From Fimbriosthenelais zetlandica (taxonomy: Eukaryota), in the NCBI GenBank assembly GCA_977030845.1, contig OZ365111.1:51274001-51338000 (forward strand): a DNA stretch of 64,000 bases, in the 5' to 3' direction. How positions within the stretch are numbered: the stretch's first letter is position 1; the number at the start of each line of letters is the position of its first letter. The notes below the pieces were generated by a model. The model had not been told where the DNA came from, searched no databases, and saw only the letters and a list, made by a program, of their open reading frames with translations. A program made the position numbers and the translations under genes. Shown here in pieces: positions 26,288-51,102 of this stretch.

Positions 26288-26371
26288 GTCAGGATGGCCG
26301 AGCGGTCTAAGGCGCTGCGTTCAGGTCGCAGTCCACTTCTGTGGGCGTGGGTTCGAATCCCACTTCTGACA
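26288..26371 (+). tRNA. tRNA-Leu(CAG), array A no.1
   Basis: 84-nt GTCAGGATGGCCGAGCGGTCTAAGGCGCTGCGTTCAGGTCGCAGTCCACTTCTGTGGGCGTGGGTTCGAATCCCACTTCTGACA; class-II cloverleaf with variable arm; A and B boxes; followed by an oligo-dT terminator. Confidence 0.97.
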
Positions 26372-26456
26372 TTTTTTTTCACCCATGTGAGTGTATGACT
26401 TGTCTTGTTTTCAATTAGTTTGTACTCGAGGGTTGGCTATTGTTCATAGATCAGCG

Positions 26457-26540
26457 GTCAGGATGGCCGAGCGGTCTAAGGCGCTGCGTTCAGGTCGCAG
26501 TCCACTTCTGTGGGCGTGGGTTCGAATCCCACTTCTGACA
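26457..26540 (+). tRNA. tRNA-Leu(CAG), array A no.2
   Basis: Identical 84-mer; TTTTT downstream. Confidence 0.97.
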
Positions 26541-26627
26541 AGTCTTTTTCCACCCATTTGATGTTATGCATTGTCTTGATTTCAATTAGTTTGTACTAGA
26601 GGGTTGCCTGTTGCTCATTGGCCAGCG

Positions 26628-26711
26628 GTCAGGATGGCCGAGCGGTCTAAGGCGCTGCGTTCAGGTCGCAGTCCACTTCTGTGGGCGTGGGTTCGAATCC
26701 CACTTCTGACA
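26628..26711 (+). tRNA. tRNA-Leu(CAG), array A no.3
   Basis: Identical 84-mer. Confidence 0.97.
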
Positions 26712-26793
26712 GGTGTTTTTCCACCCATTTGAGAGTATGCCTTGTCTTGTTTTCAATTGTACTCGAGGGTTGGCTGTAGCTCTTTGTCTACCA

Positions 26794-26877
26794 GTCAGGA
26801 TGGCCGAGCGGTCTAAGGCGCTGCGTTCAGGTCGCAGTCCACTTCTGTGGGCGTGGGTTCGAATCCCACTTCTGACA
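26794..26877 (+). tRNA. tRNA-Leu(CAG), array A no.4
   Basis: Identical 84-mer. Confidence 0.97.
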
Positions 26878-27087
26878 TATATTTTTCCACCCATTTGAGA
26901 GTATGTTTGTTTTCAATTAGTTTGTTTTTCCTAGTTTCTGAGGGTTTGGATGACTTCTATTAACTGGGGTCAAAGAAAAAATGTTTAAAAAGCAAATTCC
27001 AATATTTCCTTGTTGTCAGAGTTTTTGAGTTCTTGCAAATTTACATCTGTAGTGTTGTGTGTGACAGTTATCATTGACAATCTAGAG

Positions 27088-27140
27088 ATAAAAGATTCGC
27101 CTGGCATCTGTGAAACTTTAGGGTTCGATTCCTGGTCTGG
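27088..27140 (+). pseudogene. degenerate tRNA-derived (Ala-like/SINE-head-like) remnant, spacer A
   Basis: CGCCTGGCAT...GGGTTCGATTCC retains a B-box and an Ala-like anticodon loop; the cloverleaf is not intact. Confidence 0.4.
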
Positions 27141-27855
27141 CAACTACATTTCACTGTGACCTGGGCCTCATTATTTTATTGTTTTAACATTATGAACATT
27201 AGTGTACCACATTATGAACATTACTGTATCACATTTTAAAATCGCCACAGCATAGTGATGATTTCCCATATCTTTTCAGTGATAACTTTAAAAGTGACAT
27301 GCATGATGGCATGACCTTTCCATCAATTACGATGGCCACCATTAATTTGAGACGGTGGGAATCACGTTGCCTCTTAAATGACGATTTTTAAAACCAGTTC
27401 TATATGTAGTGGCACCTTATTCAATAAGAGAAGTGTAATAATTATACTACTATAGGCTATACGTCAAAGTCCATACTCCGACACCTTAATGGACTTCGAT
27501 TAGAGTGAACTATTAGAGATGGTTTCGCCAAGTATAAACCATTTATCTTTGGCAATTTACTCCAGTAAGCGTCCTTTAAATCACGCAAATATATGTTATA
27601 CGAATATATTTAATCGGCTGCCATTTCACTATTAAATAACTAATATTGTATAGGAGATATAACGGCCCATTGAAAATCTGTAGCCCTTTGTCAAATCAAG
27701 ATGGAGGCATTAAATTTGATTGCATGCTTTCAGTTTATTAAATCCACCATAAGTCAACTAACAAATTCCTCTAACAGGCTAATAGGTGCTGTCATGAAGC
27801 GTAGTCCGTTAACAGTCTGTATACACGAGGTCCATGTATAGTGGTCATCACAGGG

Positions 27856-30800
27856 TCAGCTGGTAAATGAAGGCATGTCAGTCAGGCCGACTGTATGGAG
27901 GGTCGCGATGTAAGCTTCAGCAATTCTCAGCTTCAGAATACCAACAGGTATGTTGGACACGGGTACAAAGTGTGCTCCAATACTGCAAGATGAACAATGA
28001 CAGTTTGAACAAAGTCAATGTAAAGCAAAACGCTAGCAAAAAATCAAATTCCTTTTCAAAAATGAATATTTTCGATGCTTACCCAGATTCCAGAGCCTCG
28101 ATGAAGGCAGGTGCTGCCAGGATAGATTCAACAGGGGTGGCGTCTAATCCAGAAGAAGGTACTAAAATATAAAATATTACATTATACCATAGTCCATCAT
28201 TCAGCCATTTAATTAAGTAAAAATAGCACAGATGGTTCTAGTTCAAGTATTTAATCTTACCGATTCCAACAGCTTTGCTGGTGATGATGGCTTTAACCAC
28301 ATGGTCAAACACTGGTAGGATGTCTGCAGCTGTCACCATCTTGGTCGTGCTACCCACCATTACATTAGCTAGTCTGAAAGGTAAAAATATTATCAAGCCA
28401 CGTCTTACATGCCATTCTACTAGGTTCCCCAGATACCTCCCAGATATATTTATAAGGTTCTTACACGTCTGCGTATTTACTGCGGATGCTTGTGTAGATT
28501 GAATTCTTCAAGAAGACTTCAGGTGCAATGGGTGCACCAAAGGCACCAATACCAGCAGCAATGTGGTTACTGATCAGTCCAAGGCCACCAATGGGAGAAC
28601 CAAAACCTCCAATACCAGCAAGTGGGCTAGCATATGCGCCGTAGGGCATGCCATAAGGTCCAGCAGCCATGGGAATGCCAGCAGTAATGGGACTACCATA
28701 AACTCCAACTCCAGCAGCAATTGGGTTACCATAAGCTCCAACTCCAGCAGCAATTGGGTTACCAAAAGCACCAACTCCAGCAGCAATGGGGTTACCAAAA
28801 GCGTCTATTCCCATACCAACAGTCAGGGGATTGACAGAAGCAGCCATGAGGGGGTTACCGACAGCAGCAATGGGGTTACTCATAGTACCAACTGCAGCAG
28901 CTAGGGGATTGCCAAATGCGTCAATTCCAGCAGCGTCAATTCCAGCAGCAGGAATGCCTGCAACGAGGGTCTTTCCAAAAGCAGCCGCGAGGGGGCTACC
29001 AAAAGCACCAAGACCAGCAGCGATGGGGTTACCAATAGCGTTCATTCCAATACCAGCAGCCAGGGGATGGCCAAGAGCAGCCGCAACGGGGAGGCCAAAG
29101 GCAGCACCAATTCCAGCAGCCAGGGGGTGAGCTAAGGCTCCAATTCCAGCAGCTATAGGGATTCCAGCAGCAATGGGACTGCCATAAGGTCCAATAGCTC
29201 CAATAGCTCCACAAGCTCCGGTGGCTACACAGGGCATTGTCATGTGCATAACTGAAAAGATTATCATATTTAAAATAGGTTTTTAAACATTTGGACATTC
29301 AGACTAAATTTTTTAGCTTTTAAATTCTCACCCAGTTGGCTGGCGAACCATGCTCGTACTGCGGCCATGTTTTCCATCTTGGCGATCGGTGAGAGGGCAA
29401 CACGAAGCTCATTAGCCAGCACTGCAAACGGTGTGGTCAGAAGTCCTTCAATGGGAGCAATGGCGGCCATGTTGGATGCACCAACGATCTTACCAAGCCA
29501 AGACTTTAGCACAGATGGTCCAAAGGCTGCCTCGATCCTTGCAGGTAATTCCACCAGTAGAGTCTTCACTGAAGCTTTGTAAGCCATTGGTTCAGCTCCA
29601 CAGATCGCTACTTCCTTCTTGATCACTGTCATGATCTTAGCTTTCATTACAGGCAAGATGGACGCCATTGTCGCCGTTCTCCAGTCAGCTGGGATGATCT
29701 CCTTGATGGCCTTCACTACAGTCACATCTGATAAATCAAGGTTCAGACATAACCAATTTATCATATTTTCACTTTACCATAGGAAACTTTGGGCTTTGGC
29801 CCAATTTGGCAACACTAAAGCCAAGCCATTTGTGTTGTATTGAAACACAAGCTACCAGCCTATGACAACTTACCAGCCACAGATGCTATGTGGGCCGCAA
29901 TGGCCGCCTGTTCACGTTCAAACAGTGAAGTAACTGCTGTCACAATCTCAGCCTCAGTGACAGTCTTAGTCTTGACAGCGCTGGTCATGGCGTAGTGAAG
30001 TACACTGGCGACAGAGGCCTTAGCCTTGATGAAGTGGGCATTGACGGCACCAGGCAGCAATGCTACAATTACAAAAATAACATTCCAAATGCATGTAGCA
30101 ATGCAATCATTACGCTTAAGCTACAGAATACGGACCATTCCATAGCAGGTGAAATCCATTGCCATACCTGCAGCGAATTTGGCGGCGACACCCTTGATGC
30201 AAACTGCTGGGACAGCTGCTTCTATTTCCTTAACCAGGGGCACGATCATTTGGGCGATTACTGCAGGGTGGATGCGAGCTAGTGGTTCAAATCCAGTCAA
30301 AGCATGGGCTGCCAGGATGGCTGCAACTGAGGGGTCTGCAATTGATATTAATACCAACAATATGTATTAGGTCCAACCATATATTAGGTCCATTTTATAG
30401 ACACTGAAGAGTCTTTAAGATAGCACCAATACAACTTACCATAGATTGGTGCTACACCTGCACCGGAAGCTCCCATCAGTCCCCACGCATGCGCCATAGC
30501 CATGATGGGTTTGATACTGACGATGTCCGCTGCAATGTCCATCTCCAAAGCCTCGATCACTCCACCACAAGCTCCAACAACAGGGGCGATCATAGCTACA
30601 ACCTGTAAGAAAAGTATTGCCTCAATTACTCTACAATTCAATAGCCACCATCCTTTTATCACTCCCTTATGTGTTAAGTTGAACAAGTTTAGTAAATTCA
30701 TTTCAGTTACCTTGGTCTTTTCAGCAACAGGCATTACAGATGCCAGGTCCCTTGCGATCATGTTTGGTATTCCAACAGCAAACCTTTTAAAGAAACAAGG

Positions 30801-33513
30801 CGAGTACAATTGAAGGTATATCAGGCTAATCAACTTAATAGATTCCGACTACCTAATGGCAAGTCCCCACTTTTGAATCTAAAATATTTTATACCAACCC
30901 GTTCTCAATCTTGACAATGGTAGCATGAACAGCCGACGTCAGTACTTTAGCATCCATGGCACAGATGCTGCCAGAATCCACCTTGGTGACGATATGGTTG
31001 AAGGCATCCACGATAGCGGGACCAGTCAGGGCTCCCTCACGTTCTAACGTGGCCAGAGATCGCACCACCATCCAAGACACCTTCTTTACGATGGCCAGGG
31101 CTGCAAATAAAACATGGTTTATTAATACAGCCACGTAGGTATATTATATCCTAGCTTGAAATATATTCAAGACAAGTCCACAACATTTGTTACCTTCGAC
31201 AGCGTCTTCTGCGACAAGTTCCTGTTTGATCAAATCTTGGAAGAAGGCAGGTTCAGCAAGCGCCGATAGGTCTACACTTGGGAGCGCCATTTTGATGGCC
31301 TTGGTATGAACAATGGTGATGGTCTTCAGTAGTGCTGAAAGATCGAACAACTCAGATAAGAAATCTACATACAAATGTCCGGAACTAACATTAAGTCAAA
31401 ATTGACATTCAATAATAATTTGCAGGCATTGTTAATCTTACCAGCATGATAGACAGCCTTCATCTGAGCCGAGCAGGCGTGGGTGGCAGGCGGGAAGCTG
31501 AGGACTGAAGCTCCAAAGCCAGGAACAGGGAATCCAGGGGCAATTCCAGCGATACCAGGGGCAATTCCAGCGATACCAGGGGCAATTCCAGCGATACCAG
31601 GGGCAATTCCAGCGATACCAGGGGCAATTCCAGCGATACCAGGGGCAATTCCACCGATACCAGGGGCAATTCCACCGATACCAGGGGCAATTCCACCGAT
31701 ACCAGGGGCAATTCCACCGATACCAGGGGCAATTCCACCGATACCAGGGGCAATTCCACCGATACCAGGGGCAATTCCACCGATACCAGGGGCAATTCCA
31801 GCAAGACCGGGGGCAGCGATACCACCAAGACCAGCAGCAAGTGGGGCAGCAATACCAGACGCAACACCAGGGGCAATTCCAGCTTCAGGCATAAAGGCTC
31901 CCATGCCAGCAATACCAGGAGCGATGCCAGCAATGGCCGGCGCAGCAATACCAGGGGCTATTCCAGGAAGACTAGCAGTAGCGGCAATTCCAGCTAGAGG
32001 GGCAGCAATACCAGGCGCAATTCCAGCTAGAGGGGCAGCTATACCAGGAGCGATGCCAGCAATGATTGGGGCAGCAATACCAGACATACCAGCTCCATAT
32101 ACTGCAGCAGTATCAGCCCGGACAACGTGCACTGCAAGAAAATTACCATCTCACTAGCAAATTAAAGCCAAAAATATTATCAAGTGCAACATTTTATTAA
32201 TCTTGTTCCGAGCTCAGCTTCTAACCAGGCAAAATGACTTACCGATATGATGGATGAAGGCAGCGATGGGCAGACCACGCGGCAGAGCGAGAGCGATATG
32301 ATCAGCGTTGGCGACGATGGCATGAATGATGAAATGAATGGTCTTAACGATGTCCTGGGTTACGACAGGGGCAAGGCTAGCGTCCGTTACGATGGTCTCT
32401 ACAGCGGATGTAATTTTAGCTACGGCTGGAGCGCCAACAATCATTCCAGGTCCCCTGAAACATTCATTACAGAACACTGAATTTTATGCTTTTATCTAAA
32501 GCCGACTGTTTAAATCTGATATAGCAGAATCCATCAAATTTTGAGCCAGATGAGCAATTCTAAGGCAATTAGAAATTAACCAAATTCATTAACTCACATG
32601 GCGACCACAGCGTCCATGTTCTCCACGAAGGCCCACAGTTGTTTCTCAGAGATCATCTCGCTACATGGAGCGGAAGCCAAGGCGGCCATGACAGTTTTGA
32701 AATGAGCGATGACGTCATTTCCCATGACGAGTCCTGGTTTACTTACAGCCATCTTCACAAAGTCATCAAGTCCTGCACCAATACCGGAAATGCCTGGAAA
32801 AGATCATCGAAATGCAGCATTGTAAACCTTGCTGGAAGTTTAAATATCAATTCAGTCACATCTCAATAAGATCAGATCCACAATTTACCTTTGATCATAG
32901 CGGGGTACTCAGCCAGGGTACTGACGGGCGTGAAGTAACCACCCACAATGTCATTGATCACATCACCAACAATGGCTTCAGTGTCAGACGGTATGAAAGC
33001 CAGAGACCTGAGAGCCATACCACGGATCACAGCCGAGCTCACCACCGTGTTAGGCTTCATTAATCCTGAAATAATTACAAACTGATTAGAACAAGTAAAC
33101 TAATCAAGATATAGGCCATTTACGTGTCAAAAACAGATCCAGTAGAAGAGGAATTTGGAAGGTTATGCGCTGTAGACGAATAGAGAAATTCTCACCAAAA
33201 GCAAGAGTGAATTTGGCGCGTTGAGGGCAGGTCATTCCGGCGGCGGTCGTCCTCCATACATCCTGTAGAGTAGCGGCTATCTGGCCGACCTCAGCCTCGG
33301 TCATGTCCACTACAGCCTTAGTGGACATCTCCCGCACGCCAAAGAAGGCGCGACTTTCTGTAAGACAAGACGACTCAGTTAAAAAGTAGACAATCGGTCA
33401 AGTTTGCGTGGAGAATTTCAAATTTAATGAAATTAAATCGAAATTAAATATGAAAACTTACCGACGCCATAGGCGACAAGTAAGGCGAGGCAGAGAGGTA
33501 GACAGCGCCACAT
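27856..33513 (-). CDS. same family, copy 2 (~1,310 aa)
   Basis: Same exon series and splice sites as copy 1; exon 6 = 690 nt with (IGGIAPG)7(IAGIAPG)5; exon 14 = 787 nt; ends ...TDMPSFTS*. Confidence 0.85.
31534..31806. repeat. 21-bp coding minisatellite (I[G/A]GIAPG x12 plus a flanking unit) in copy 2 exon 6
   Basis: CCAGGGGCAATTCCA(G/C)CGATA: 5 GCG-type then 7 CCG-type units on the + strand. Confidence 0.95.
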
Positions 33514-33591
33514 GTTGAGATGTAGAAGTCGTGGATGTATGTAGAATGGTTGCTCTGAACGAGCAGTGACCACAGCTGGTGATCTCACGCC

Positions 33592-33598
33592 TTTTATA
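33592..33598 (-). promoter_or_regulatory. TATA box of copy 2
   Basis: Identical motif and identical 79-nt offset from the ATG. Confidence 0.75.
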
Positions 33599-34010
33599 CT
33601 CCCACAGGTCCCCACAGAATCCCAAACCACGGACCAGGATCAAAGGTCACATATAGGGGGGGTAGGTAGGTGACAATTAGGTGGACAATACACTGGATTG
33701 AAGCCCTCAACGTGTGGGCCATCTCAACACATTTATTATCTTAAAATGATGAAAAGATTTGTGTGTTTATTGGTTTTAATTTGTGAGATTTTGTCGGAAA
33801 TCTAAAATTTAACACAGGGCGGCCTCCCACTGAGTATGGAAGGGTCCATTGTCAAAAGGCTGGTCACTCTCGACATATTCTTGGAGTCAATCTCGACCTG
33901 CTAAGCTTGAAACCCGTTCTACAAGTTCCGGGCTATATTGCTAGATACATTGCTGGAATATTGTTAGATTGCCTGTTAACCGAGGCTTGGCTGTTGCTCA
34001 TAGGTCAGCA

Positions 34011-34094
34011 GTCAGGATGGCCGAGCGGTCTAAGGCGCTGCGTTCAGGTCGCAGTCCACTTCTGTGGGCGTGGGTTCGAATCCCACTTCTGACA
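34011..34094 (+). tRNA. tRNA-Leu(CAG), array B no.1
   Basis: Identical 84-mer. Confidence 0.97.
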
Positions 34095-34180
34095 TATTTT
34101 TTTCACCCATGTGAGGGTATGCCTTGTCTTGATTTCAATTAGTTTGTACTCGAGGGTTGGCTGTTGCTCCTAGACCAGCA

Positions 34181-34264
34181 GTCAGGATGGCCGAGCGGTC
34201 TAAGGCGCTGCGTTCAGGTCGCAGTCCACTTCTGTGGGCGTGGGTTCGAATCCCACTTCTGACA
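34181..34264 (+). tRNA. tRNA-Leu(CAG), array B no.2
   Basis: Identical 84-mer. Confidence 0.97.
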
Positions 34265-34350
34265 TATTTTTTTCACCCATGTGAGGGTATGCCTTGTCTT
34301 GTTTTCAATTAGTTTGTACTCGAGGGTTGGCTGTTGCTCCTAGACCACCA

Positions 34351-34434
34351 GTCAGGATGGCCGAGTGGTCTAAGGCGCTGCGTTCAGGTCGCAGTCCACT
34401 TATGTGGGCGTGGGTTCGAATCCCACTTCTGACA
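34351..34434 (+). tRNA. tRNA-Leu(CAG), array B no.3 (loop variants)
   Basis: D-loop C>T and variable-loop C>A; stems intact. Confidence 0.92.
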
Positions 34435-34521
34435 AGTCTTTTCCCACCCATTTGATGGTATGCCTTGTATTGTTTTCAATTAGTTTGTACTCGAGGGTTG
34501 GCTGTTGCTCTTTTTTCAACA

Positions 34522-34605
34522 GTCAGGATGGCCGAGCGGTCTAAGGCGCTGCGTTCAGGTCTCAGTCCACTTCTGTGGGCGTGGGTTCGAATCCCACTTC
34601 TGACA
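34522..34605 (+). tRNA. tRNA-Leu(CAG), array B no.4 (anticodon-stem mismatch)
   Basis: CGCAG>CTCAG in the 3' anticodon stem; possibly impaired. Confidence 0.8.
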
Positions 34606-34692
34606 AGTCTTTTCCCACCCATTCGATGGTATGCCTTGTATTGTTTTCAATTAGTTTGTACTCGAGGGTTGGCTGTTGCTCTTTTTTCAACA

Positions 34693-34776
34693 GTCAGGAT
34701 GGCCGAGCGGTCTAAGGCGCTGCGTTCAGGTCGCAGTCCACTTCTGTGGGCGTGGGTTCGAATCCCACTTCTGACA
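34693..34776 (+). tRNA. tRNA-Leu(CAG), array B no.5
   Basis: Identical 84-mer. Confidence 0.97.
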
Positions 34777-34863
34777 AGTCTTTTTCCACCCATTTGATGG
34801 TATGCCTTGTATTGTTTTCAATTAGTTTGTACTCGAGGGTTGGCTGTTGCTCTTTTTTCAACA

Positions 34864-34947
34864 GTCAGGATGGCCGAGTGGTCTAAGGCGCTGCGTTCAG
34901 GTCGCAGTCCACTTCTGTGGGCGTGAGTTCGAATCCCACTTCTGACA
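34864..34947 (+). tRNA. tRNA-Leu(CAG), array B no.6 (T-stem mismatch)
   Basis: D-loop C>T plus GTGGG>GTGAG (A.C mismatch in the T stem). Confidence 0.8.
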
Positions 34948-35035
34948 TATTTTTTTCATCCATTTGAGGATATATGCCTTGTCTTGTTTTCAATTAGTTT
35001 GTACTCGAGGGTTGGCTGTTGCTCCTAGACCAGCA

Positions 35036-35119
35036 GTCAGGATGGCCGAGCGGTCTAAGGCGCTGCGTTCAGGTCGCAGTCCACTTCTGTGGGCGTGGGT
35101 TCGAATCCCACTTCTGACA
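35036..35119 (+). tRNA. tRNA-Leu(CAG), array B no.7
   Basis: Identical 84-mer. Confidence 0.97.
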
Positions 35120-35206
35120 AGTCTTTTTCCACCCATTTGATGGTATGCCTTGTATTGTTTTCAATTAGTTTGTACTCGAGGGTTGGCTGTTGCTCTTTTT
35201 TCAACA

Positions 35207-35290: not shown

Positions 35291-35378
35291 TATTTTTTTC
35301 ATCCATTTGAGGATATATGCCTTGTCTTGTTTTCAATTAGTTTGTACTCGAGGGTTGGCTGTTGCTCTTTTTTCAACA

Positions 35379-39600: not shown

Positions 39601-42350
39601 CAAGTCCCCACTTTTGAATCTAAACTAAATATTTTTATACCAACCCGTTCTCAATCTTGACAATGGTAGCATGAACAGCAGACGTCAGTGCTTTAGCATC
39701 CATGGCACAGATGCTGCCAGAGTCCACCTTGGTGACGATATGGTTGAAGGCATCCACGATAGCGGGACCAGTCAGGGCTCCCTCACGTTCTAACGTGGCC
39801 AGAGATCGCACCACCATCCAAGATACCTTCTTTACGATGGCCAGGGCTGCAAACAAAACAAATTAAAACGGATTTCAACGTAAGGTATAATAAAATCTAG
39901 CTCTTCATATTCAAGACAAGCCCACGACATTTTGTTACCTTCGACAGCGTTTTCTGCAACAAGTTCCTGTTGGATCAAATCTTGGAAGAAGGCAGGTTCA
40001 GCAAGCGCTGCTAGGTCTACACTTGGGAGCGCCATTTTGATGGCCTTCGTATGAACAATGGTGATAGTCTTCAGTAGGGCTGAAAGATCAAACAACTCTG
40101 ATAATAAATCTACATACAAATGTGCCGAACTAACATTAAGTTAGATTAACAATGCCTGCAAATCAATTTTGATGGCACCAATGTTCAATCTTACCAGCAT
40201 TGTAAACAGCCTTCATCTGAGCCGAGCAGGCGTGGGTGGCAGGCGGGAAGCTGACGACTGAAGCACCAAAGCCAGGTACAGGCAATCCAGGGGCAATACC
40301 AGCCAAACCAGCAGCAGAGATACCAGGGGCAATACCAGCCAAACCAGCAGCAGAGATACCAGGGGCAGCGATACCAGGGGCAATACCAGCCATACCACCA
40401 AGACCAGGGGCAATTCCAGGAGTAGCGATACCAGCAAGACCAGCAGCAGAGATACCAGGGGCTATTCCAGCCAGACCAGGGGCAGCGATACCAGGGACAA
40501 TTCCAGCCAGACCAGGGGCAGCGATACCAGGGACAATTCCAGCAAGACCAGGGGCAGCGATACCAGGGACAATTCCACCAAGACCAGCAGCAAGTGGGGC
40601 AGCAATACCAGATGCAACACCAGGGGCGATTCCAGCAATTCCAGCTTCAGGCATAGAGGCTCCCATGCCAGCAAAACCGGGGGCAATTCCAGCTAGAGGG
40701 GTAGCAATACCAGGAGCGATGCCAGCAATGGCCGGGGCAGCAATACCAGCGGCAATTCCAGCAAGACCAGCAGTAGCGGCAATTCCAGCTTCAGGCATAG
40801 AGGCTGCCATACCAGCAATACCGGGTGCAATTCCAGCTAGTGGAGAAGCAATACCAGGAGCGATGCCAGCAGCAATACCAGGAGCGATACCAGCAATCGC
40901 CGGGGCAGCAATACCAGACATACCAGCTCCATATACTGCAGCAGTATCAGCCCGGACAACATGCACTGCAAGAAAATTACCATCTCACTTGTAAAGTAAA
41001 GACAAAACTATAAAGTCCAACCATTTGATTAATCTCGTTCCGAGCTCATCTTCTATCCAGGCAACTAAGACTTACCGATGTGATGGATGAAGGCAGCGAT
41101 GGGCAGACCACGCGGCAGAGCGAGAGCGATATGATCAGCGTTGGAGACGATGGCATGAATGATGAAATGAATGGTCTTAACGATGTCCTGGGTTACGACA
41201 GGGGCAAGGCTAGCGTCCGTTACGATTGTCTCTACAGCTGATGTAATTTTAGCTACGGCTGGAGCGCCAACAATCCTTCCATGTTCCCTGAAACATTCGT
41301 TACAAAATACTCTGGATTTTTTGCTTTTATCTCAAGCTAACCCTAGGAGCTAGGCACAGAAGGACTGGACCAGAATTTGATGGCCGTAGATTGGCTTTTG
41401 AATCCGACATAAGCCATTAGAGATTTACCAAATTCAGCTACTCACATGGCTACAACAGCGTCCATTTTCTCCACGAAGTCCCACAGTTCTTCCTCAGAGA
41501 TCATCTCGCTACAGGGAGCGGACGCCACGGCGGCCATGACAGTTTTGAAGTGGGCGATGACGTCATTTCCCATGACGAGTCCTGGTCTAGTTACAGCCAT
41601 CTTCACAAAGTCATCAAGTCCTGCACCAATACCGGAAATGCCTGAAAAAAAAAAAAATCATAAAATGCAGTATTGTAATCCTTTGGAGGTTTCCAACAAA
41701 TCTCCATAAGATCAGAGCCACGATTTACCTTTGATCATAGCGGGGTACTCAGCCAGGGTACTGACGGGCGTGAAGTAACCACCCACAATGTCATTGATGA
41801 CATCACCAACAATGGCTTCAGTTTGAGACGGTATGAAAGCCAGAGACCTGAGAGCCATACCACGGATCACAGCCGAGCTCACCACCGAGTTAGGCTTCAT
41901 TAATCCTGAAATAATTACAAACTGATTAGTACAAGTAAAATAAGCAAGATAAAGGCCATTTACAGTTTCAAAACAGATCCAGTAGAAGAGTTATTTAAAA
42001 GCTATGCACTGTAGAGGAATACAGAAATTCTCACCAAAAGCAATCGTGAATTTGGCGCGTTGAGGGCAGGTCATTCCGGCGGCGGTCGTCCTCCATACAT
42101 CCTGTAGAGTAGCGGCTATCTGGCCGACCTCAGCCTCGGTCATGTCCACTACAGCCTTAGTGGACATCTCCCGCACGCCAAACACGGCGCGACTTTCTGT
42201 AAGTCAAGACAAGTCAGTTAAAGTGGACTGTCAATTTTCTGTGGCGAATTTGAACAAATTTAATGGAATTAAATTGGAAATAAAATATGAAAACTTACCG
42301 ACGCCATAGGCGACGAGTAAGGCGAGGCAGAGAGGTAGACAGCGCCACAT
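36636..42350 (-). CDS. same family, copy 3 (~1,310 aa)
   Basis: Same exon series; exon 6 = 771 nt, exon 14 = 718 nt; no frame disruption seen. Confidence 0.85.
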
Positions 42351-42428
42351 GTTGAGATGTAGAAGTCGTGGATGTATGTAGAATGGTTGCTCTGAACGAG
42401 CAGTGACCAGAGCTGGTCATCTCACGCC

Positions 42429-42435
42429 TTTTATA
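42429..42435 (-). promoter_or_regulatory. TATA box of copy 3
   Basis: Identical motif and offset. Confidence 0.75.
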
Positions 42436-42845
42436 CTCCCACAGGTCCACACAGAATCCCAAACCACGGACCAGGATCAAAGGTCACATATAGGGGGGTA
42501 GGTAGGTGACAATTAGGTGGACAATACACTGGACTGAAGCCCTCAACATGTGGCCATCTCAACACATTTATTATCTTAAATTGATGAAAAGATTGGAGTG
42601 TTTATTGGTTTTAATTTGCGCGATTTTGTCATGAATGGAGAATTTAGCAAAGGGCGGCCTCCCACTGAGTATGGAAGGGTCCATTGTCAAAAGGCTGGTC
42701 ACTCTTGACATAGTCTTGGAGTCAATCTCGACCTGCCAAGCTTGAAACCCGTTCTACAAGTTCCCGGCTATATTGCTAGATATATTGCTGGAATATTGTT
42801 AGATTGCCTGTTACTCGAGGGTTGCCTGTTGATGATAGGCCAGCA

Positions 42846-42929
42846 GTCAGGATGGCCGAGCGGTCTAAGGCGCTGCGTTCAGGTCGCAGTCCACTTCTGT
42901 GGGCGTGGGTTCGAATCCCACTTCTGACA
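42846..42929 (+). tRNA. tRNA-Leu(CAG), array C no.1
   Basis: Identical 84-mer. Confidence 0.97.
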
Positions 42930-43016
42930 AGTCTTTTTCCACCCATTTGAGGATATGCCTTGTCTTATTTTCAATTAGTTTGTACTCGAGGGTTGCCTGT
43001 TGATGATAGGCCAGCA

Positions 43017-43100
43017 GTCAGGATGGCCGAGCGGTCTAAGGCGCTGCGTTCAGGTCGCAGTCCACTTCTGTGGGCGTGGGTTCGAATCCCACTTCTGACA
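43017..43100 (+). tRNA. tRNA-Leu(CAG), array C no.2
   Basis: Identical 84-mer. Confidence 0.97.
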
Positions 43101-43187
43101 TATCTTTTTACACCCATTTGAAAGTATGCCTTGTATTGTTTTCAATTAGTTTGTACTCGAGGGTTGGCTGTTGCTCTTTTCTCAACA

Positions 43188-43271
43188 GTCAGGATGGCCG
43201 AGCGGTCTAAGGCGCTGCGTTCAGGTCGCAGTCCACTTCTGTGGGCGTGGGTTCGAATCCCACTTCTGACA
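43188..43271 (+). tRNA. tRNA-Leu(CAG), array C no.3
   Basis: Identical 84-mer. Confidence 0.97.
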
Positions 43272-43706
43272 TATTTTTCCTCCCATTTGAGGGTATGCCT
43301 TGTATTGTTTTCAATTCGTACGTACTGCCTATTTTCTGACGGTCATTCTGAACCATTGGACACCTATTACCAGGGCCAAGCTTATTAACCCTTTCGCGGC
43401 GAACAATGCCTCAATGCATTCCCGTGCAGAGGGCGAGCAATGCATTAATACATTATGAGCCCTTTTTGATCAATTTAGAGTGGGGAATTTGCTAGATTTT
43501 GGTGAAAATTTGGTTTCAATATTCCAATTAGAAGCCGAGATATGGACTTTCGAATTCGGTAATGTCCATTTGTTTTCCGAAATATTGATTTCCCTAAAGT
43601 ACAATATTTATATAGGAAACGTTTAAAAATACAATTCCAATATTGCAGACCAGTAGCATGGCAATTTCCTTGTTGTTCAGGCATTGAAAATCCTGATGAT
43701 CTAGGA

Positions 43707-43760: not shown

Positions 43761-44473
43761 AACTCGCATTTCACTGACCTTGGCCTCATTATTTTATTGT
43801 TTGAACATTATGAACATCAGTGTACCACATTTTAAAACGTCACTGCATAGTAATGATTTTCCATATCTTTCCAGTGATAACTTTAAAAGTGACAGGATTG
43901 CATTACCTTTCCATCAATTACCCTGGCCAACATTAATTTTATCTATAATTTTCACTAACCGTTATTTAAGAGGCAGCGCGATTCCCACTTTTTTAAAAAC
44001 AATGTCCCAGTATATGCGGCGGCGCCTTATACAATTAGAGAAGAAAAGGAAATAACTCTTTATATTGGGAGTTAGGCTATACGGAAAGGTCCATTGTCGG
44101 ATTCACTAATGGACTTTGGCTTACTATCCTATCTTATAGTTTTTTTACTACCAAATATAAGCCAATTAGCTTTGCAATTTGCTCGAGTAAGCGTCCTTTA
44201 AATAATCGCCTATCTAGATGTTAAACGAATATATTTAGTCGGCTGCCATTTCACTTTTAAATAACTAATACGAGATACAACTGCCAATTTAAAATCTGTA
44301 TCCCTTTGTCAAATCAAGATGGAGGCATTAAATTTGATTGTACGCTTTCAGTTTATTAAATCCACCATAAGTCAACTAACAGATTCCTCTAACAGGCTAA
44401 TAGGTGCTGTCATGAAGCGTAGTCCGTTAACAGTCTGTATACACGAGGTCCATGTATAGTGGTCATCACAGGG

Positions 44474-47400
44474 TCAGCTGGTAAATGAAGGCATGTCAGT
44501 CAGGCCGACTGTATGGAGGGTCGCGATGTAAGCTTCAGCAATTCTCAGCTTCAGAATCCCAACAGGTATGTTGGACACGGGTACAAAGTGTGCGCCAATA
44601 CTGCAAGAGACAGATAACAGTCGCTATACCAGAAACATATTGTCATGCAACATTTAGACCATGGGATGCAAGCCAAGACACCCTCATGGTTAATTTCAAA
44701 TACTTCATTTCGATCCTTACCCAGATTCCAGAGCCTCGATGAAGGCAGGTGCTGCCAGGATAGATTCAACAGGGGTGGCTTCCAATCCTGCGACAGGTAC
44801 TAAAAGCCAAATTACATTATGTATATAGTCCATCATTCAGCTGTTTTAGTAAGTTAGACTAACCAGAGACGGTTCTAGTTCAAGTATTCAGTCTCTTACC
44901 GATTCCAACGGCTTTGCTGGTGATGATGGCTTTAACCACGTGGTCAAACACGGGTAGGATGTCTGAGGCCGCCACCATCTTGGTCGTGCTACCATACATT
45001 ACATTAGCCAGTCTGAAAAGGCAAAACAATATCAAGCCACGTCTTACATGCCATAATACAAGGTACCCCAGATATATCCCAGATATATTTATAAGGTTCT
45101 TACATGTCTGCGTATTTACTGCGGATGCTTGTGTAGATTGAATTCTTCAAGAAGACTTCAGGTGCAATGTGTGCACCAATACCAGCAGCAATGGGGTTAC
45201 TGATCAGTCCAAGGCCACCAATGGGAGAACCAAAACCTCCAATACCAGCAAGTGGGCTAGCATATGCGCCGTAGGGCATGCCATATGGTCCAGCAGCCAT
45301 GGGAATGCCAGCGGTAATGGGACTACCAAAAGCACCCACTCCAGCAGCAATGGGGTTACCAAAAGCACCCACTCCAGCAGCAATGGGGTTACCAAAAGCA
45401 CCCACTCCAGCAGCAATGGGGTTACCAAAAGCACCCACTCCAGCAGCAATGGGGTTACCAAAAGCACCCACTCCAGCAGCAATGGGGTTACCAAAAGCAC
45501 CCACTCCAGCAGCAATGGGGTTACCAAAAGCACCCACTCCAGCAGCAATGGGGTTACCAAAAGCACCCACTCCAGCAGCAATGGGGTTACCAAAAGCACC
45601 CACTCCAGCAGCAATGGGGTTACCAAAAGCACCCACTCCAGCAGCAATGGGGTTACCAAAAGCACCCACTCCAGCAGCAATGGGGTTACCAATAGTACCA
45701 ATTGCAGCAGCTAGGGGATTGCCAAATGTGTCAATTCCAGCAGCAGGAATGCCAGCAACGAGGGGCGTTCCAAAAGCACCAAAACCAGCAGCGATGGGGT
45801 TACCAATAGCGTTGATTCCAATACCAGCGGCCAGGGGATGGCCAAGAGCAGCCGCAACGGGGAGGCCAAAAGCAGCACCAATTCCAGAAGCAATAGGGAT
45901 TCCAGCAGCAATGGGATTGCCATAAGGTCCCATTGCTCCAATAGCTCCAATAGCTCCACAAGCACCGGTGGCTACGCAAGGCATTGTCATGTGCATTACT
46001 GAAAAGATTATAATCATTTTAAAATAAAGTTTAAACATTAGGACATTCAGACTAAATTTTTTAAATTTCAAAAAATCTCACCCAGTTGGCTGGCGAACCA
46101 TGCTCGTACTGCGGCCATGTTTTCCATCTTGGCGATCGGTGAGAGGGCAACACGAAGCTCATTAGCCAGCACTGCAAACGGTGTGGTCAGTAGTCCTTCA
46201 ATGGGAGCAAAGGCGGCCATGTTGGCTGCACCAATGATCTTACCAAGCCAAGACTTCAGCACAGATGGTCCAAAGGCTGCCTCGATCCTTGCAGGTAGCT
46301 CTACTAGTATCGCTTTCTCCCACGCTTTGTAAGCCATTGGTTCAGCTCCACAGATGGCTACTTCCTTCTTGATCACCGTCATGATCTTAGCTTTCATTAC
46401 GGGCAAGATGGACGCCATTGTCGCTGTTCTCCAGTCAGCTGGGATAATCTCCTTGATGGCCTTCACTACAGTCACATCTGTAATAAATCAAGTTTCAGAC
46501 CCGACTAATATATTTTCAGCTTACCATATAAATATGTGCTTAGGCCCAATTTGACAAAACTAAAGCCAAGCCATTTGTGTTGTATTGAAACACAAGCTAC
46601 CAGCCTATGACAACTTACCAGTCACGGACGCTATGTGGGCAGCAATGGCCGCCTGTTCACGTTCAAACAGTGAAGTAACTGCTGTCACAATCTCAGCCTC
46701 AGTGACAGTCTTGGTCTTGACAGCGCTGGTCATGGCGTATTGAAGTACACTGGCGACAGAGGCCTCAGCCTTGATGAAGTGGGCATTGACGGCACCAGGC
46801 AGCAAAGCTACAAGCACAAAAATCAAATTCCAAATGCATGTAGCAATGCAGTCATTACGGTTCTAGCCACAGAATATGGCCCATTCCATTCGAGGTGAAA
46901 TCTATTGCATACCTGCAGCGAATTTGGCTGCCACACCCTTGATGCAAACTGCTGGGACCCCTGCTTCTATTTCCTTAACCAGGGGCACGATCATTTGGGC
47001 GATTACTGCAGGGTGGATGCGAGCTAGTGGTTCAAATCCAGTCAAAGCATGGCCTGCCAAGATGGCTGCAACTGCTGGGTCTGCAATTGACATCAATACC
47101 AACAATTATGCCATATATTCGGCCCTTTTATATACACTAAAGCTTCTATAAGACAAATCGAACTTGTCTTACCATAGATTGGTGCTACACCTGCACCGGA
47201 AGCTCCCATCAGTCCCCACGCATGCGCCATAGCCATGATGGGTTTGATACTGAGGATGTCCTCTGCAATGTCCATCTTCAAAGCCTCGACCACTCCACCA
47301 CAAGCTCCAACCACTGGGGCGATCATAGCTACAACCTGTAGGATAAACATTGCCTCAATTACTCTACCATTCAATAGCCACCATCAGTCCCTTCTGTGTT

Positions 47401-50352
47401 AAGTTGAACAAGTTCATTAAATTCCTTTCAGTTACCTTGGCCTTTTCAGCAACAGGCATTACAGATGCCAGGTCCCGTGCGATCATGTTTGGTATTCCAA
47501 CAGCAAACCTATTAAAGAAACAAGGCGAGTACAACTGAAGGGATATCAGGCTAATCAACTTAATAGATTCCGACTATCTATAATCAAACTCTGGCAAGTC
47601 CCCACTTTTGAATCTAAACTAAATATTTTTATACCAACCCGTTCTCAATCTTGACAATGGTAGCATGAACAGCAGACGTCAGTGCTTTAGCATCCATGGC
47701 ACAGATGCTGCCAGAATCCACCTTGGTGACGATATGGTTGAAGGCATCCACGATAGCGGGACCAGTCAGGGCACCTTCACGTTCTAACGTGGCCAGAGAT
47801 CGCACCACCATCCAAGACACCTTCTTTACGATGGCCAGGGCTGCACACAAAACAAATTAAAACGGATTTCAACACAAGGTATAATAAAATCTAGCTCTTC
47901 ATATTCAAGACAAGCCCACGACATTTGTTACCTTCGACAGCGTTTTCTGCAACAAGTTCCTGTTGGATCAAATCTTGGAAGAAGGCAGGTTCAGCAAGCG
48001 CTGCTAGGTCTACACTTGGGAGCGCCATTTTGATGGCCTTCGTATGAACAATGGTGATAGTCTTCAGTAGGGCTGAAAGATCAAACAACTCTGAAAATAA
48101 ATCTACATACAAATGTGCCTAACTAACATTAAGTTAGATTGAACATTGGTGCCATCAAAATTGATTTGCAGGCATTGTTAATCTTACCAGCATTGTAAAC
48201 AGCCTTCATCTGAGCCGAGCAGGCGTGGGTGGCAGGCGGGAAGCTGACGACTGAAGCACCAAAGCCAGGTACAGGCAATCCAGGGGCAATACCAGCCAAA
48301 CCAGCAGCAGAGATACCAGGGGCAATACCAGCCAAACCAGCAGCAGAGATACCAGGGGCAATACCAGCCAGACCAGGGGCAATACCAGCCAGACCAGGGG
48401 CAGCGATACCAGGGGCAATACCAGCCATACCACCAAGACCAGGGGCAATTCCAGGAGTAGCGATACCAGCAAGACCAGCAGCAGAGATACCAGGGGCTAT
48501 TCCAGCCAGACCAGGGGCAGCGATACCAGGGACAATTCCAGCAAGACCAGGGGCAGCGATACCAGGGACAATTCCACCAAGACCAGCAGCAAGTGGGGCA
48601 GCAATACCAGATGCAACACCAGGGGCGATTCCAGCAATTCCAGCTTCAGGCATAGAGGCTCCCATGCCAGCAAAACCGGGGGCAATTCCAGCTAGAGGGG
48701 TAGCAATACCAGGAGCGATGCCAGCAATGGCCGGGGCAGCAATACCAGCGGCAATTCCAGCAAGACCAGCAGTAGCGGCAATTCCAGCTTCAGGCATAGA
48801 GGCTGCCATACCAGCAATACCGGGTGCAATTCCAGCTAGTGGAGAAGCAATACCAGGAGCGATGCCAGCAGCAATACCAGGAGCGATACCAGCAATCGCC
48901 GGGGCAGCAATACCAGACATACCAGCTCCATATACTGCAGCAGTATCAGCCCGGACAACATGCACTGCAAGAAAATTACCATCTCACTTGTAAAGTAAAG
49001 ACAAAACTATAAAGTCCAACCATTTGATTAATCTCGTTCCGAGCTCATCTTCTATCCAGGCAACTAAGACTTACCGATATGATGGATGAAGGCAGCGATG
49101 GGCAGACCACGCGGCAGAGCGAGAGCGATATGATCAGCGTTGGCGACGATGGCATGAATGATGAAATGAATTGTCTTAACGATGTCTTGGGTTACGACAG
49201 GGGCAAGGCTAGCGTCCGTTACGATGGTCTCTACAGCTGATGTGATTTTAGCGACGGCTGGAGCTCCAACAATCATTCCATGTTCCCTGTAACATTCATT
49301 AAAAAATACTCTGGATTTTTTTGCTTTTATCTCAAGCTAACCGTATGAGCTAGGCACAGAAAGACTCGACCAGAATTTGATGGCCGTAGGCTTTTGTATC
49401 CGACATAAGCCATTAGAGATTTACCAAATTCAGCTACTTACATGGCTACAACAGCGTCCATTTTCTCCACGAAGGCCCACAGTTCTTCCTCAGAGATCAT
49501 CTCGCTACAGGGAGCGGACGCCACGGCGGCCATGACAGTTTTGAAGTGGGCGATGACGTCATTTCCCATGACGAGTCCTGGTTTAGTTACAGCCATCTTC
49601 ACAAAGTCATCAAGTCCTGCGCCAATACCGGAAATGCCTGGAAAAGATCATTGAATTGCAGCATAGTAAACCTCCGTGAAAGTTTTAATAACGCGTCTCA
49701 ATATGATCAGATAAAAGACTTACCTTTGATGATAGCGGGGTACTCAGCCAGGGTACTGACGGGCGTGAAGTAACCACCCACAATGTCATTGATGACATCA
49801 CCAACAATGGCTTCAGTTTCAGACGGTATGAAAGCCAGAGACCTGAGAGCCATACCACGGATCACAGCCGAGCTCACCACCGTGTTAGGCTTCATTAATC
49901 CTGAAATAATTACAAACTGATTAGTACAAGTAAAATAAGCAAAATATAGGCCATTTACGGGTCCAAAATAGACCCAGTAGCACCGACATTTAGAGGTAAA
50001 GTCTTTTGTACCCAGCCATTTACGAATAGAAGAATTCTCACCAAAAGCAATAGTGAATTTGGCGCGTTGAGGGCAGGTCATTCCGGCGGCGGTCGTCCTC
50101 CATACATCCTGTAGAGTAGCGGCTATCTGGCCGACCTCAGCCTCGGTCATGTCCACTATAGCCTTAGTGGACATCTCCCGCACGCCAAACACGGCACGAC
50201 TTTCTGTAAGTCAACACAAAAGTCAGTTAAAGTGGAATTTCTGTGGAGAATTTGAACAACTTTAATGAAATTAAGTTGGAAATAAACTATAAAAACTTAC
50301 CGACGCCATAGGCGACGAGTAAGGCGAGGCAGAGAGGTAGACAGCGCCACAT
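44474..50352 (-). CDS. same family, copy 4 (~1,370 aa)
   Basis: Same exon series; exon 6 = 777 nt, exon 14 = 895 nt with (GNPIAAGVGAF)11. Confidence 0.85.
45328..45690. repeat. 33-bp coding minisatellite x11 (GNPIAAGVGAF) in copy 4 exon 14
   Basis: 11 perfect AAAAGCACCCACTCCAGCAGCAATGGGGTTACC units. Confidence 0.95.
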
Positions 50353-50430
50353 GTTGAGATGTAGAAGTCGTGGATGTATGTAGAATGGTTGCTCTGAACG
50401 AGCAGTGACCAGAGCTGGTCATCTCACGCC

Positions 50431-50437
50431 TTTTATA
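50431..50437 (-). promoter_or_regulatory. TATA box of copy 4
   Basis: Identical motif and offset. Confidence 0.75.
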
Positions 50438-50848
50438 CTCCCACAGGTCCACACAGAATCCCAAACCACGGACCAGGATCAAAGGTCACATACAGGGGGG
50501 TAGGTAGGTGACGATTAGCTGGACAATACACTGGACTGAAGCCCTCAACATGTGGGCCATCTCAACACATTTATTATCTTAAATTGATGAAAAGATTTGG
50601 GTGTGTATTGGTTTTAATTTGTGAGATTTTGACGGAAATTTGGAATTTAACAAAGGGCGGCCTCACACTGAGTATGGAAGGGTCCATTGTCAAAAGGCTG
50701 GTCACTCTCGACACATTCTTGGAGTCAATCTCGACCTGCCAAGCTTGAAACCCGTTCTACAAGTTCCCGGCTATATTGCTAGATATATTGCTGTAATATT
50801 GTTAGATTGCCTGTTACTCGAGGGTTGGCTGTAGCTCATAGACCAGCG

Positions 50849-50932
50849 GTCAGGATGGTCGAGCGGTCTAAAGCGCTGCGTTCAGGTCGCAGTCCACTTC
50901 TGTGGGCGTGGGTTCGAATCCCACTTCTGACA
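50849..50932 (+). tRNA. tRNA-Leu(CAG), array D no.1 (D-stem disrupted, possible pseudogene)
   Basis: GGCCG>GGTCG and TAAGG>TAAAG give U.G and C.A in the D stem; the changes are not compensatory. Confidence 0.7.
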
Positions 50933-51018
50933 TAATTTTTTCACCCATGTGAGTTCATGACTTGTCTTGTTTTCAATTAGTTTGTACTCGAGGGTTGGCT
51001 GTTATTCATATGCCAGCA

Positions 51019-51102
51019 GTCAGGATGGCCGAGCGGTCTAAGGCGCTGCGTTCAGGTCGCAGTCCACTTCTGTGGGCGTGGGTTCGAATCCCACTTCTGA
51101 CA
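51019..51102 (+). tRNA. tRNA-Leu(CAG), array D no.2
   Basis: Identical 84-mer. Confidence 0.97.

What the first reader, a model, noticed from the sequence alone, without database searches (positions are those of the whole stretch)
26288..51102. Arrays of tRNA-Leu(CAG) genes at a fixed distance upstream of each gene copy (4, 9, 3, 2, 0)
Seen in sequence: 18 tRNA-Leu(CAG) genes in ~170-bp units, each with a conserved TACT(C/A)GAGGGTTG 5' flank (TTAACCGAGGCTTG at the first unit of array B) and an oligo-dT terminator. They are transcribed away from the Pol II gene, and the first tRNA lies 412, 413, 411 and 412 bp from the TATA box of copies 1-4. Copy number changes independently of gene copy number, so there are two nested amplification scales. 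Established: tRNA genes and TFIIIC can act as chromatin barriers or insulators and as recombination-prone sites. Inference: the arrays may insulate or open each promoter, tune paralogue expression, or act as the homology that drives unequal crossover in the cluster.
Basis: partly seen in the sequence, partly recalled or inferred. Interest (0 to 1): 0.85.

Follow-up and report, generated by a model that had tools for sequence, protein, structure and literature searches.

The report
tRNA-Leu arrays between tandem gene copies
Eighteen apparently functional leucine tRNA genes sit in four short tandem arrays in the spacers between five copies of a secreted repeat-protein gene; their constant distance from each promoter comes from the spacer being copied with the gene, not from independent placement.

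Summary
There are 18 tRNA-Leu(CAG) genes on the + strand in arrays of 4, 9, 3 and 2, with a period of about 171 bp. The first tRNA lies 412, 413, 411 and 412 bp from the TATA box of copies 1-4. Copy 5 has none.

The fixed distance is shared ancestry. The TATA-to-tRNA interval is one homologous segment, 94-97% identical between copies. The spacer consists of 38 bp, the array and about 0.8-1.1 kb up to the next copy's AATAAA signal. It occurs only between copies, so there are five genes and four spacers. That is what recombination between paralogues produces.

The tRNAs look functional. Their bodies vary more than ten times less than their flanks, and 14 of 18 are canonical. First and last units are related across arrays, so the array was already multi-unit before the spacers multiplied. 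Only array B expanded recently.

Leu is 5-8% of the neighbouring protein and CTG is 26% of its Leu codons, so the tRNAs are not a local supply for that gene.

An insulator or read-through roadblock role is plausible but untested. A recombination role has only weak support. Scan notes report other single-isoacceptor tRNA arrays in this genome. My verdict is a new member of a known kind, of modest interest.

The parts
26254..26925 (+). Array A: 4 tRNA-Leu(CAG) genes (26288-26371, 26457-26540, 26628-26711, 26794-26877), all canonical
33981..35516 (+). Array B: 9 tRNA-Leu(CAG) genes (starts 34011, 34181, 34351, 34522, 34693, 34864, 35036, 35207, 35379). It contains recent duplicates (B6=B8, B3~B7, B4~B5). 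Variant bodies: B3, B4, B6, B8, B9
42812..43316 (+). Array C: 3 tRNA-Leu(CAG) genes (42846, 43017, 43188), all canonical. C1 and C2 share one leader type
50815..51157 (+). Array D: 2 tRNA-Leu(CAG) genes (50849, 51019). D1 has a D-stem mismatch (C12-A24) and a wobble (U11-G25)
20519..26215 (-). Gene copy 1 (the most divergent). AATAAA signal at 20574-20579, ATG at 25791, TATA at 25869-25876. Homology with the other copies runs 20519-26215
27674..33938 (-). Gene copy 2. AATAAA signal at 27734-27739, stop at 28461, ATG at 33513, TATA at 33591-33598
36454..42773 (-). Gene copy 3. AATAAA signal at 36514-36519, stop at 37285, ATG at 42350, TATA at 42428-42435
44292..50776 (-). Gene copy 4. AATAAA signal at 44352-44357, stop at 45100, ATG at 50352, TATA at 50430-50437
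52099..58519 (-). Gene copy 5. AATAAA signal at 52159-52164, stop at 52927, ATG at 58088, TATA at 58166-58173. Upstream homology to the other copies stops at 58519, and no tRNA follows
26216..26253 (+). 38-bp junction between the end of the gene-unit homology and the first tRNA unit. Same segment at 33939-33980, 42774-42811 and 50777-50814. Absent upstream of copy 5
26926..27673 (+). Post-array spacer A, homologous to 35517-36453, 43317-44291 and 51158-52098. Spacers B-D carry about 300 bp more than A. Each holds a B-box-like tRNA/SINE relic (27122, 35933, 43741, 51557)

Best explanation
These are working Pol III tRNA-Leu(CAG) genes. They lie in the intergenic spacer of a head-to-tail cluster of five paralogues, each encoding a secreted Ala/Gly/Ile/Pro-rich repeat protein.

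Proposed history:
1. A short multi-unit tRNA array, probably at least three units, already sat in the spacer between two early gene copies.
2. Non-allelic recombination or gene conversion between the paralogues then multiplied the gene together with the spacer. That yields five genes and four spacers and carries the array to the same place upstream of each internal promoter.
3. Within each spacer the 171-bp unit gained and lost copies by unequal exchange in register with the identical 84-nt tRNA body. This gives 4, 9, 3 and 2, with recent growth only in array B.
4. Purifying selection, perhaps helped by conversion, kept the tRNA bodies and a -34..-22 upstream block nearly invariant while the other flanking sequence diverged by 13-20%.

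Shown: the anatomy, the homology boundaries, the conservation contrast and the mosaic exchange. Inferred: the order of events, that the tRNAs are transcribed, and that any effect on the neighbouring promoters is incidental rather than selected.
For: - Genes and terminators: 18 tRNAs score above the gathering threshold and each has a T-run terminator. The B box GGTTCGAATCC is intact in 16 of 18.
- Conservation: 7 of 84 tRNA-body columns vary (pi 0.013) against 44 of 82 flank columns (pi 0.14-0.17), Fisher p = 1e-10. The -34..-22 block varies in 1.7% of cells against 19.3% for -21..-1.
- Inherited spacing: the TATA-to-tRNA interval is one homologous segment, 94-97% identical between copies 1-4.
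- Boundaries: copy 5 homology stops at 58519, equivalent to 26215 and 38 bp before the first unit. Copy 1 homology starts near 20519, equivalent to 27674 and just past the AATAAA signal. The spacer therefore exists only between copies.
- Spacer homology: the post-array spacers of all four junctions are homologous.
- Array history: first units group across arrays (A1 with D1), as do last units (A4, B9, C3). Flank divergence within arrays (12.7%) is close to that between arrays (16.4%), and only B has near-identical units.
- Exchange: mosaic identity among the copies shows frequent exchange.
- Context: scan notes report other single-isoacceptor tandem tRNA arrays in the same genome (not checked here).
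Against: - No expression, Pol III occupancy or population data could be obtained, so transcription of the tRNAs and neutrality towards the neighbours are both inferred.
- All four spacers kept at least one canonical tRNA and at least two units, even though about 30% divergence has accumulated in the oldest spacer. That could also reflect selection for a cis role.
- The right edge of the gene-unit homology coincides with the left edge of the array to within 38 bp. A purely passive model leaves that coincidence unexplained.
Confidence: 0.6

Rival explanations
1. Selected barrier or roadblock. Each array, bound by TFIIIC/TFIIIB/Pol III, separates the 3' end of paralogue n+1 from the promoter of paralogue n. 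It would block read-through Pol II, which meets the tRNA genes head-on, and the spread of enhancer or chromatin states, so that each copy is regulated on its own. Copy 5 is first in the direction of transcription and has no upstream paralogue, so it needs no array.
For: - Position: each array lies 857-1081 bp beyond the AATAAA signal of the upstream copy and 411-413 bp before the next TATA box.
- Orientation: the tRNAs are opposite to the Pol II genes.
- Retention: every spacer keeps at least one canonical tRNA with an intact B box, plus one further B-box-like relic.
- Precedent: Pol III complexes act as Pol II roadblocks in yeast (PMC5052057, PMC4228148). A Pol III-occupied MIR interferes with a mouse Pol II gene (PMC5358760). 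tDNAs with TFIIIC act as architectural or insulator sites (PMC4226948). A human tRNA VNTR has been proposed as a boundary (PMC4041453).
Against: - The pattern of an array in every spacer and none at copy 5 is exactly what passive co-duplication gives.
- Array size varies from 2 to 9 with no visible correlate.
- Copy 5 keeps the same promoter and an open reading chain without an array.
- Tandem tRNA arrays are reported elsewhere in this genome away from such clusters.
- From my own knowledge, active tRNA genes in yeast repress nearby Pol II promoters (tRNA-gene-mediated silencing), which argues against a promoter-opening role.
- No functional data exist.
Confidence: 0.2
2. Recombination substrate. 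The identical 84-nt tRNA bodies are the homology at which unequal crossover occurs between spacers. On this view they drove or still drive expansion and contraction of the gene cluster itself.
For: - The four arrays group differently on their two sides. The left flank (-420..-73) has 6 informative sites for A+C, 2 for A+D and none for A+B. The right flank (+1..+500) has 17 for B+C and none for the other two groupings. At least one exchange breakpoint therefore lies in or at the arrays.
- Arrays change size by whole units.
- The gene-unit homology ends within 38 bp of the array.
Against: - The cluster has n-1 arrays and ends in genes. Array-to-array crossover as the founding mechanism predicts arrays flanking the cluster.
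- The grouping switches at many other points in the 8-kb unit, so the arrays are not special.
- The paralogues offer 5-6 kb of homology against 0.3-1.5 kb for an array.
Confidence: 0.1
3. Cargo of a mobile element. The array would be the central tandem repeat of a Helentron-type non-autonomous element (HINE-like) that inserted once into the early spacer.
For: - The 171-bp monomer and 2-9 copies match the usual 160-180 bp monomers and short arrays of oyster Cg_HINE elements (PMC7492417).
- A scan note reports a HINE-like element carrying tRNA-Leu genes on the same chromosome (not checked).
- The spacer is absent from both outer flanks of the cluster.
Against: - No terminal or subterminal inverted repeats or end hairpin were found around array A.
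- All four arrays share one duplicated context, so at most one insertion happened.
- No empty-site match exists between the sequence right of copy 5 and the spacers.
- Both edges of the array resemble partial units, as expected for tandem duplication in place.
Confidence: 0.05
4. Local tRNA supply matched to the codon demand of the adjacent highly expressed structural gene.
For: The only support is the adjacency to a repeat-rich secreted protein gene.
Against: - Heuristic gene models give Leu at 5.4-8.0% of residues and CTG at 26% of Leu codons.
- The proteins are dominated by Ala, Gly, Ile, Val and Pro.
- tRNAs act in trans, so linkage brings no supply benefit.
Confidence: 0.02

Closest known systems
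Homogeneous tandem tRNA gene clusters of eukaryotes (survey: PMC2888827; Arabidopsis Cys, Ser/Tyr and other clusters: PMC10701932, PMC12308677)
   Same: Same-isoacceptor tRNA genes in one orientation, spaced under 1 kb, in short repeat units. Copy number changes by unequal exchange.
   Different: Here four small arrays are spread through a protein-coding tandem cluster, one per intergenic spacer, rather than forming one stand-alone block.
Human 1q23.3 tRNA VNTR (PMC4041453)
   Same: tRNA genes sit inside a repeat unit of about 7-8 kb with variable copy number. The tRNAs are conserved while the rest of the unit diverges. A boundary role has been proposed.
   Different: The human unit carries no protein-coding gene, holds several different tRNAs, and its boundary case rests on a CTCF site. 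Here the unit is a Pol II gene plus a nested array of a single tRNA species.
tDNA/TFIIIC insulators and Pol III roadblocks (PMC4226948, PMC5052057, PMC4228148, PMC5358760)
   Same: Intact A and B boxes lie between neighbouring Pol II units, oriented head-on to possible read-through.
   Different: Occupancy and barrier activity are not shown here. Membership is only a possibility.
Cg_HINE Helentron non-autonomous elements with central arrays of 160-180 bp (PMC7492417)
   Same: Monomer length (171 bp) and array size (2-9 copies).
   Different: The monomer is a complete tRNA gene. No HINE-type flanks or inverted repeats were found, and the four arrays are copies of one locus, not dispersed insertions.

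Membership tests
Nuclear tRNA gene with a type-2 Pol III promoter | Cloverleaf and sequence match the tRNA covariance model above the gathering score | tested here: met
   18 of 18 score 44.9-56.2 bits against a threshold of 29. ARAGORN calls Leu, anticodon CAG, with a long variable arm.
Nuclear tRNA gene with a type-2 Pol III promoter | Internal A box and B box | tested here: met
   The A-box region is TGGCCGAGCGG and the B box GGTTCGAATCC is exact in 16 of 18. B6 and B8 change the first G of the B box. D1 changes the A box.
Nuclear tRNA gene with a type-2 Pol III promoter | Oligo-T terminator just after the 3' end | tested here: met
   A run of 4-8 T starts 0-4 nt after every tRNA.
Nuclear tRNA gene with a type-2 Pol III promoter | Transcription by Pol III and a mature tRNA product | not testable with these tools
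   No sequencing run was listed for this locus. Constraint on the tRNA body is more than ten times that on the flanks, which is indirect support.
Homogeneous tandem tDNA cluster | Same isoacceptor, same orientation, neighbours under 1000 nt apart | tested here: met
   Spacing is 166-172 bp and all genes are on the + strand. Definition from PMC2888827.
tDNA insulator / barrier | TFIIIC-binding B boxes located between two separately regulated Pol II units | tested here: inconclusive
   The sequence and position requirements are present. Whether the flanking paralogues are regulated differently is unknown.
tDNA insulator / barrier | Demonstrated TFIIIC or Pol III occupancy and enhancer-blocking, barrier or roadblock activity | not testable with these tools
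   This needs ChIP or CUT&Tag, reporter assays or deletions.
HINE (Helentron non-autonomous element) | Central array of monomers of about 140-180 bp, usually 2-5 or more copies | tested here: met
   The monomer is 171 bp with 2-9 copies, matching the ranges in PMC7492417.
HINE (Helentron non-autonomous element) | Conserved left flank with subterminal inverted repeats and right flank with inverted repeats or stem-loops | tested here: not met
   The inverted-repeat scan of 26100-27900 found only two weak pairs unrelated to the array ends.
HINE (Helentron non-autonomous element) | Dispersed copies at unrelated sites with empty-site paralogues | tested here: inconclusive
   Within the window all four arrays share one duplicated context and there is no empty-site match. 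The rest of the genome could not be searched.
Tandem segmental duplication maintained by non-allelic exchange | Head-to-tail homologous units with mosaic identity between copies | tested here: met
   Five units are 65-100% identical in patches. The closest pair changes along the unit.

The most novel reading that the evidence does not exclude
The arrays are selected spacer devices. Head-on Pol III complexes between every pair of head-to-tail paralogues would stop read-through and regulatory cross-talk. This would let a rapidly amplifying structural-protein cluster keep each promoter independent, with array length as a tunable barrier strength. Copy 5 has no upstream paralogue and would need none.
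Probability: 0.15. Interest if true: 0.65.

Novelty: new member of a known kind. Interest (0 to 1): 0.3.

Why it matters
If the arrays are only passengers, the locus is still a clean natural example of three nested scales of tandem amplification: exonic minisatellites, 171-bp tRNA units and 8-kb gene units. It also shows selection holding tRNA genes constant inside a fast-churning cluster.

If the arrays act as barriers or roadblocks, this would be an animal case of tDNA arrays partitioning tandem paralogues. The locus offers built-in controls for testing that: array sizes of 2 to 9, and copy 5 with none.

Tried and rejected
- Expression and population evidence: two run searches (promoter plus array D; one exon) listed no run.
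- Identity of the neighbouring protein: no Pfam family, no useful Atlas lead, no hit in the word-indexed search, and none among 1.84 billion representatives with HMMER. I treat it as lineage-restricted.
- Cross-species synteny: the best relative of the flanking GPCR is 47% identical. Its 21-kb locus L001 has no tRNA and no homologue of the cluster gene. The other locus had no DNA. This is uninformative.
- Local tRNA supply: rejected on codon counts.
- HINE cargo: flanks tested and not found.
- D1's two substitutions: I first read them as compensatory. The covariance alignment shows a mismatch plus a wobble, so I retract that reading.
- Relic tRNA units upstream of copy 5 or left of copy 1: none found.
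- Gene models: mine are heuristic (GT-AG chain search) and differ between copies in some exons. They serve only for composition and open-frame checks.
Full report
**1. Observation**

ARAGORN finds exactly 18 tRNA genes in the 64-kb window. All are tRNA-Leu(CAG) on the + strand, in four groups of 4, 9, 3 and 2. All 18 pass the Rfam tRNA gathering score, at 44.9-56.2 bits against a threshold of 29.

Tandem Repeats Finder gives a 170-171-bp period for each group. Start-to-start spacing is 166-172 bp. Twelve tRNA bodies are identical and six carry one or two substitutions.

XhoI sites are in 16 of 18 units.

**2. The neighbouring gene**

On the minus strand there are five head-to-tail copies of a multi-exon gene. 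Each has an identical start (ATG at 25791, 33513, 42350, 50352, 58088), a signal-peptide-like first exon, and TATAAAAG 78-85 bp upstream of the ATG.

The TATA boxes end at 25876, 33598, 42435, 50437 and 58173.

A heuristic GT-AG chain search gives open reading chains of 891-1233 aa in all five copies. The proteins are rich in Ala (16-22%), Gly, Ile, Val and Pro, with GIAPG-type and GAFGNPIAAG-type repeats.

No Pfam family or detectable homologue was found. The named relatives of the flanking GPCR genes are all molluscan. Scan notes mention Lox4, so the genome is lophotrochozoan.

**3. Why the distance is fixed**

The interval from the TATA box to the first tRNA is one homologous segment in copies 1-4. 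It is 94-97% identical over -420..-73 and differs in length only by 1-bp indels. The constant spacing is inherited. It is not independent evidence for a spacing requirement.

**4. Where the homology ends**

- Copy 5 shares this upstream segment up to 58519, equivalent to 26215, and then diverges completely.
- In copies 1-4 the next 38 bp lead straight into the first tRNA unit.
- On the other side, homology between copy 1 and the other copies begins near 20519, equivalent to 27674. That is about 55 bp beyond a conserved AATAAA signal (minus strand) found at 20574, 27734, 36514, 44352 and 52159.

The paralogous unit is therefore essentially the transcription unit plus 346 bp of upstream sequence.

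Everything between units is shared by all four junctions and absent from both outer flanks of the cluster. This spacer consists of the 38 bp, the array, and 857-1081 bp running from the last tRNA to the next copy's AATAAA signal.

Five genes with four spacers is what results once two paralogues flank a spacer and further copies arise by exchange between the paralogues. A cluster founded by exchange between tRNA arrays would be flanked by arrays, and this one is not.

**5. History of the arrays**

In a flank-only comparison of the 18 units, first units are nearest each other across arrays (A1 and D1, 9% apart). Last units also group together (A4, B9, C3). The groups have only modest tree support.

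Mean flank divergence within arrays (12.7%) is close to that between arrays (16.4%). In A, C and D the units of one array differ by 15-20%. Only B contains near-identical units (B6 = B8; B3/B7 and B4/B5 at 2.5%), and B shows a two-unit higher-order period.

So the ancestral spacer already carried a multi-unit array. Most units are as old as the spacers. The count of nine in B reflects recent local expansion. The exonic 21-, 33- and 36-bp repeats, whose copy numbers differ between paralogues, add a third scale.

**6. Are the tRNAs functional?**

Seven of 84 tRNA-body columns vary (pi 0.013). In the flanks 44 of 82 columns vary (pi 0.14-0.17). Fisher p is 1e-10. The right-hand spacer of array A is only 64-72% identical to the others, yet all four tRNAs of array A are canonical.

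This contrast implies purifying selection or body-restricted homogenisation, either of which points to genes in use.

Four units carry a change that breaks a stem:
- B4: G41T in the anticodon stem.
- B6 and B8: G63A in the T stem and B box.
- D1: a C12-A24 mismatch plus a U11-G25 wobble, shown in the covariance alignment.

The -34..-22 block is almost as constant as the tRNA, at 1.7% minor-allele cells against 19.3% for -21..-1. It lies where TFIIIB sits on tRNA genes, so it is a candidate upstream promoter element. That is an inference.

**7. Exchange among copies**

Sliding-window identities are a mosaic:
- Copies 3 and 4 are 98-100% identical through mid-gene.
- Copies 4 and 5 are 96-98% identical in the last exon and adjacent 3' region.
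- Copies 2 and 5 are 96-97% identical in the GIAPG exon.
- Copies 1 and 3 are 98% identical from the promoter to the tRNA, although copy 1 is otherwise 61-98% identical to the others, mostly 65-85%.

Parsimony-informative sites for the four arrays favour A+C on the left flank (6 sites, against 2 for A+D and none for A+B). On the right flank all 17 favour B+C. At least one exchange breakpoint therefore falls in or at the arrays. The favoured grouping also changes at other positions in the unit, so the arrays are not uniquely recombinogenic.

**8. Rival readings**

- *Barrier or roadblock.* This fits the geometry. Each array lies between the AATAAA signal of the copy upstream in transcription and the next promoter. 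The tRNAs face any Pol II read-through head-on. Copy 5 has no upstream paralogue. Precedents exist (PMC5052057, PMC4228148, PMC5358760, PMC4226948, PMC4041453). But passive co-duplication predicts the same layout, and nothing here tests activity.
- *Local tRNA supply.* Rejected. Leu is 5.4-8.0% of the protein and CTG is 26% of Leu codons.
- *Mobile HINE-like origin.* The monomer size and array length suggest it (PMC7492417), as does a scan note. No HINE-type inverted repeats or empty site were found, and both array edges look like partial units.
- *Assembly artefact.* Unlikely, because the units carry distinct variants, but no reads were available to check.

**9. Comparison and verdict**

Same-isoacceptor tandem tRNA clusters are known in many eukaryotes (PMC2888827). 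A human tRNA repeat of similar unit size has been discussed as a boundary (PMC4041453). Scan notes list other tandem tRNA arrays in this genome, for example 17 tRNA-Gly(UCC) genes at about 161 bp (unchecked).

The particular feature here is that one small array sits in every spacer of a protein-coding tandem cluster, and co-duplication explains that. I rate it a new member of a known kind, with modest interest (0.3). The barrier reading is the one worth testing (probability about 0.15-0.2).

Noticed in passing
window 27674-27894 (also 36454-36674, 44292-44512, 52099-52319): A block of about 220 bp around the minus-strand AATAAA signal is 99-100% identical among copies 2-5, while the neighbouring spacer and 3' UTR are 63-90% identical. 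It may be a constrained 3'-end element or a conversion hot spot.
   Followed up: partly
window 31534-31815, 56026-56412, 45308-45726, 53128-53533, 40287-40587, 48280-48591: Coding minisatellites of 21, 33 and 36 bp (GIAPGIA-type and GAFGNPIAAGV-type repeats) differ strongly in copy number between paralogues, for example 3.8 against 12.7 copies of the 33-bp unit. This is a third scale of tandem amplification in the same locus.
   Followed up: partly
window 27122, 35933, 43741, 51557 (+ strand): Each post-array spacer holds a B-box-like GGTTCGATTCC motif within a tRNA-like or SINE-like remnant, in the same orientation as the tRNAs. It is not called as a tRNA. It could be an extra TFIIIC site.
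   Followed up: partly
window 35540-35890 (also about 43345-43700 and 51180-51480): About 300 bp present after arrays B, C and D is missing after array A. This is an insertion or deletion that includes a short palindrome. It may be a small transposable element.
   Followed up: no
window 25869-26030 and equivalents: The 150 bp upstream of the TATA box, and the region from TATA to ATG, are almost invariant in all five copies, including the otherwise divergent copy 1. This indicates promoter constraint or conversion.
   Followed up: partly
window 18017-19921, 59331-60494, 61745-62992: The cluster is flanked by a C2H2 zinc-finger gene with a 27-bp coding repeat at 19529-19676, and by two intronless rhodopsin-type GPCR genes. 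The nearer GPCR is transcribed divergently from copy 5.
   Followed up: partly
window 22494-23255 (copy 1): My heuristic model of copy 1 passes through a stretch that reads in a different frame from the other copies. Copy 1 may be partly degenerate, or the model may be wrong there.
   Followed up: no
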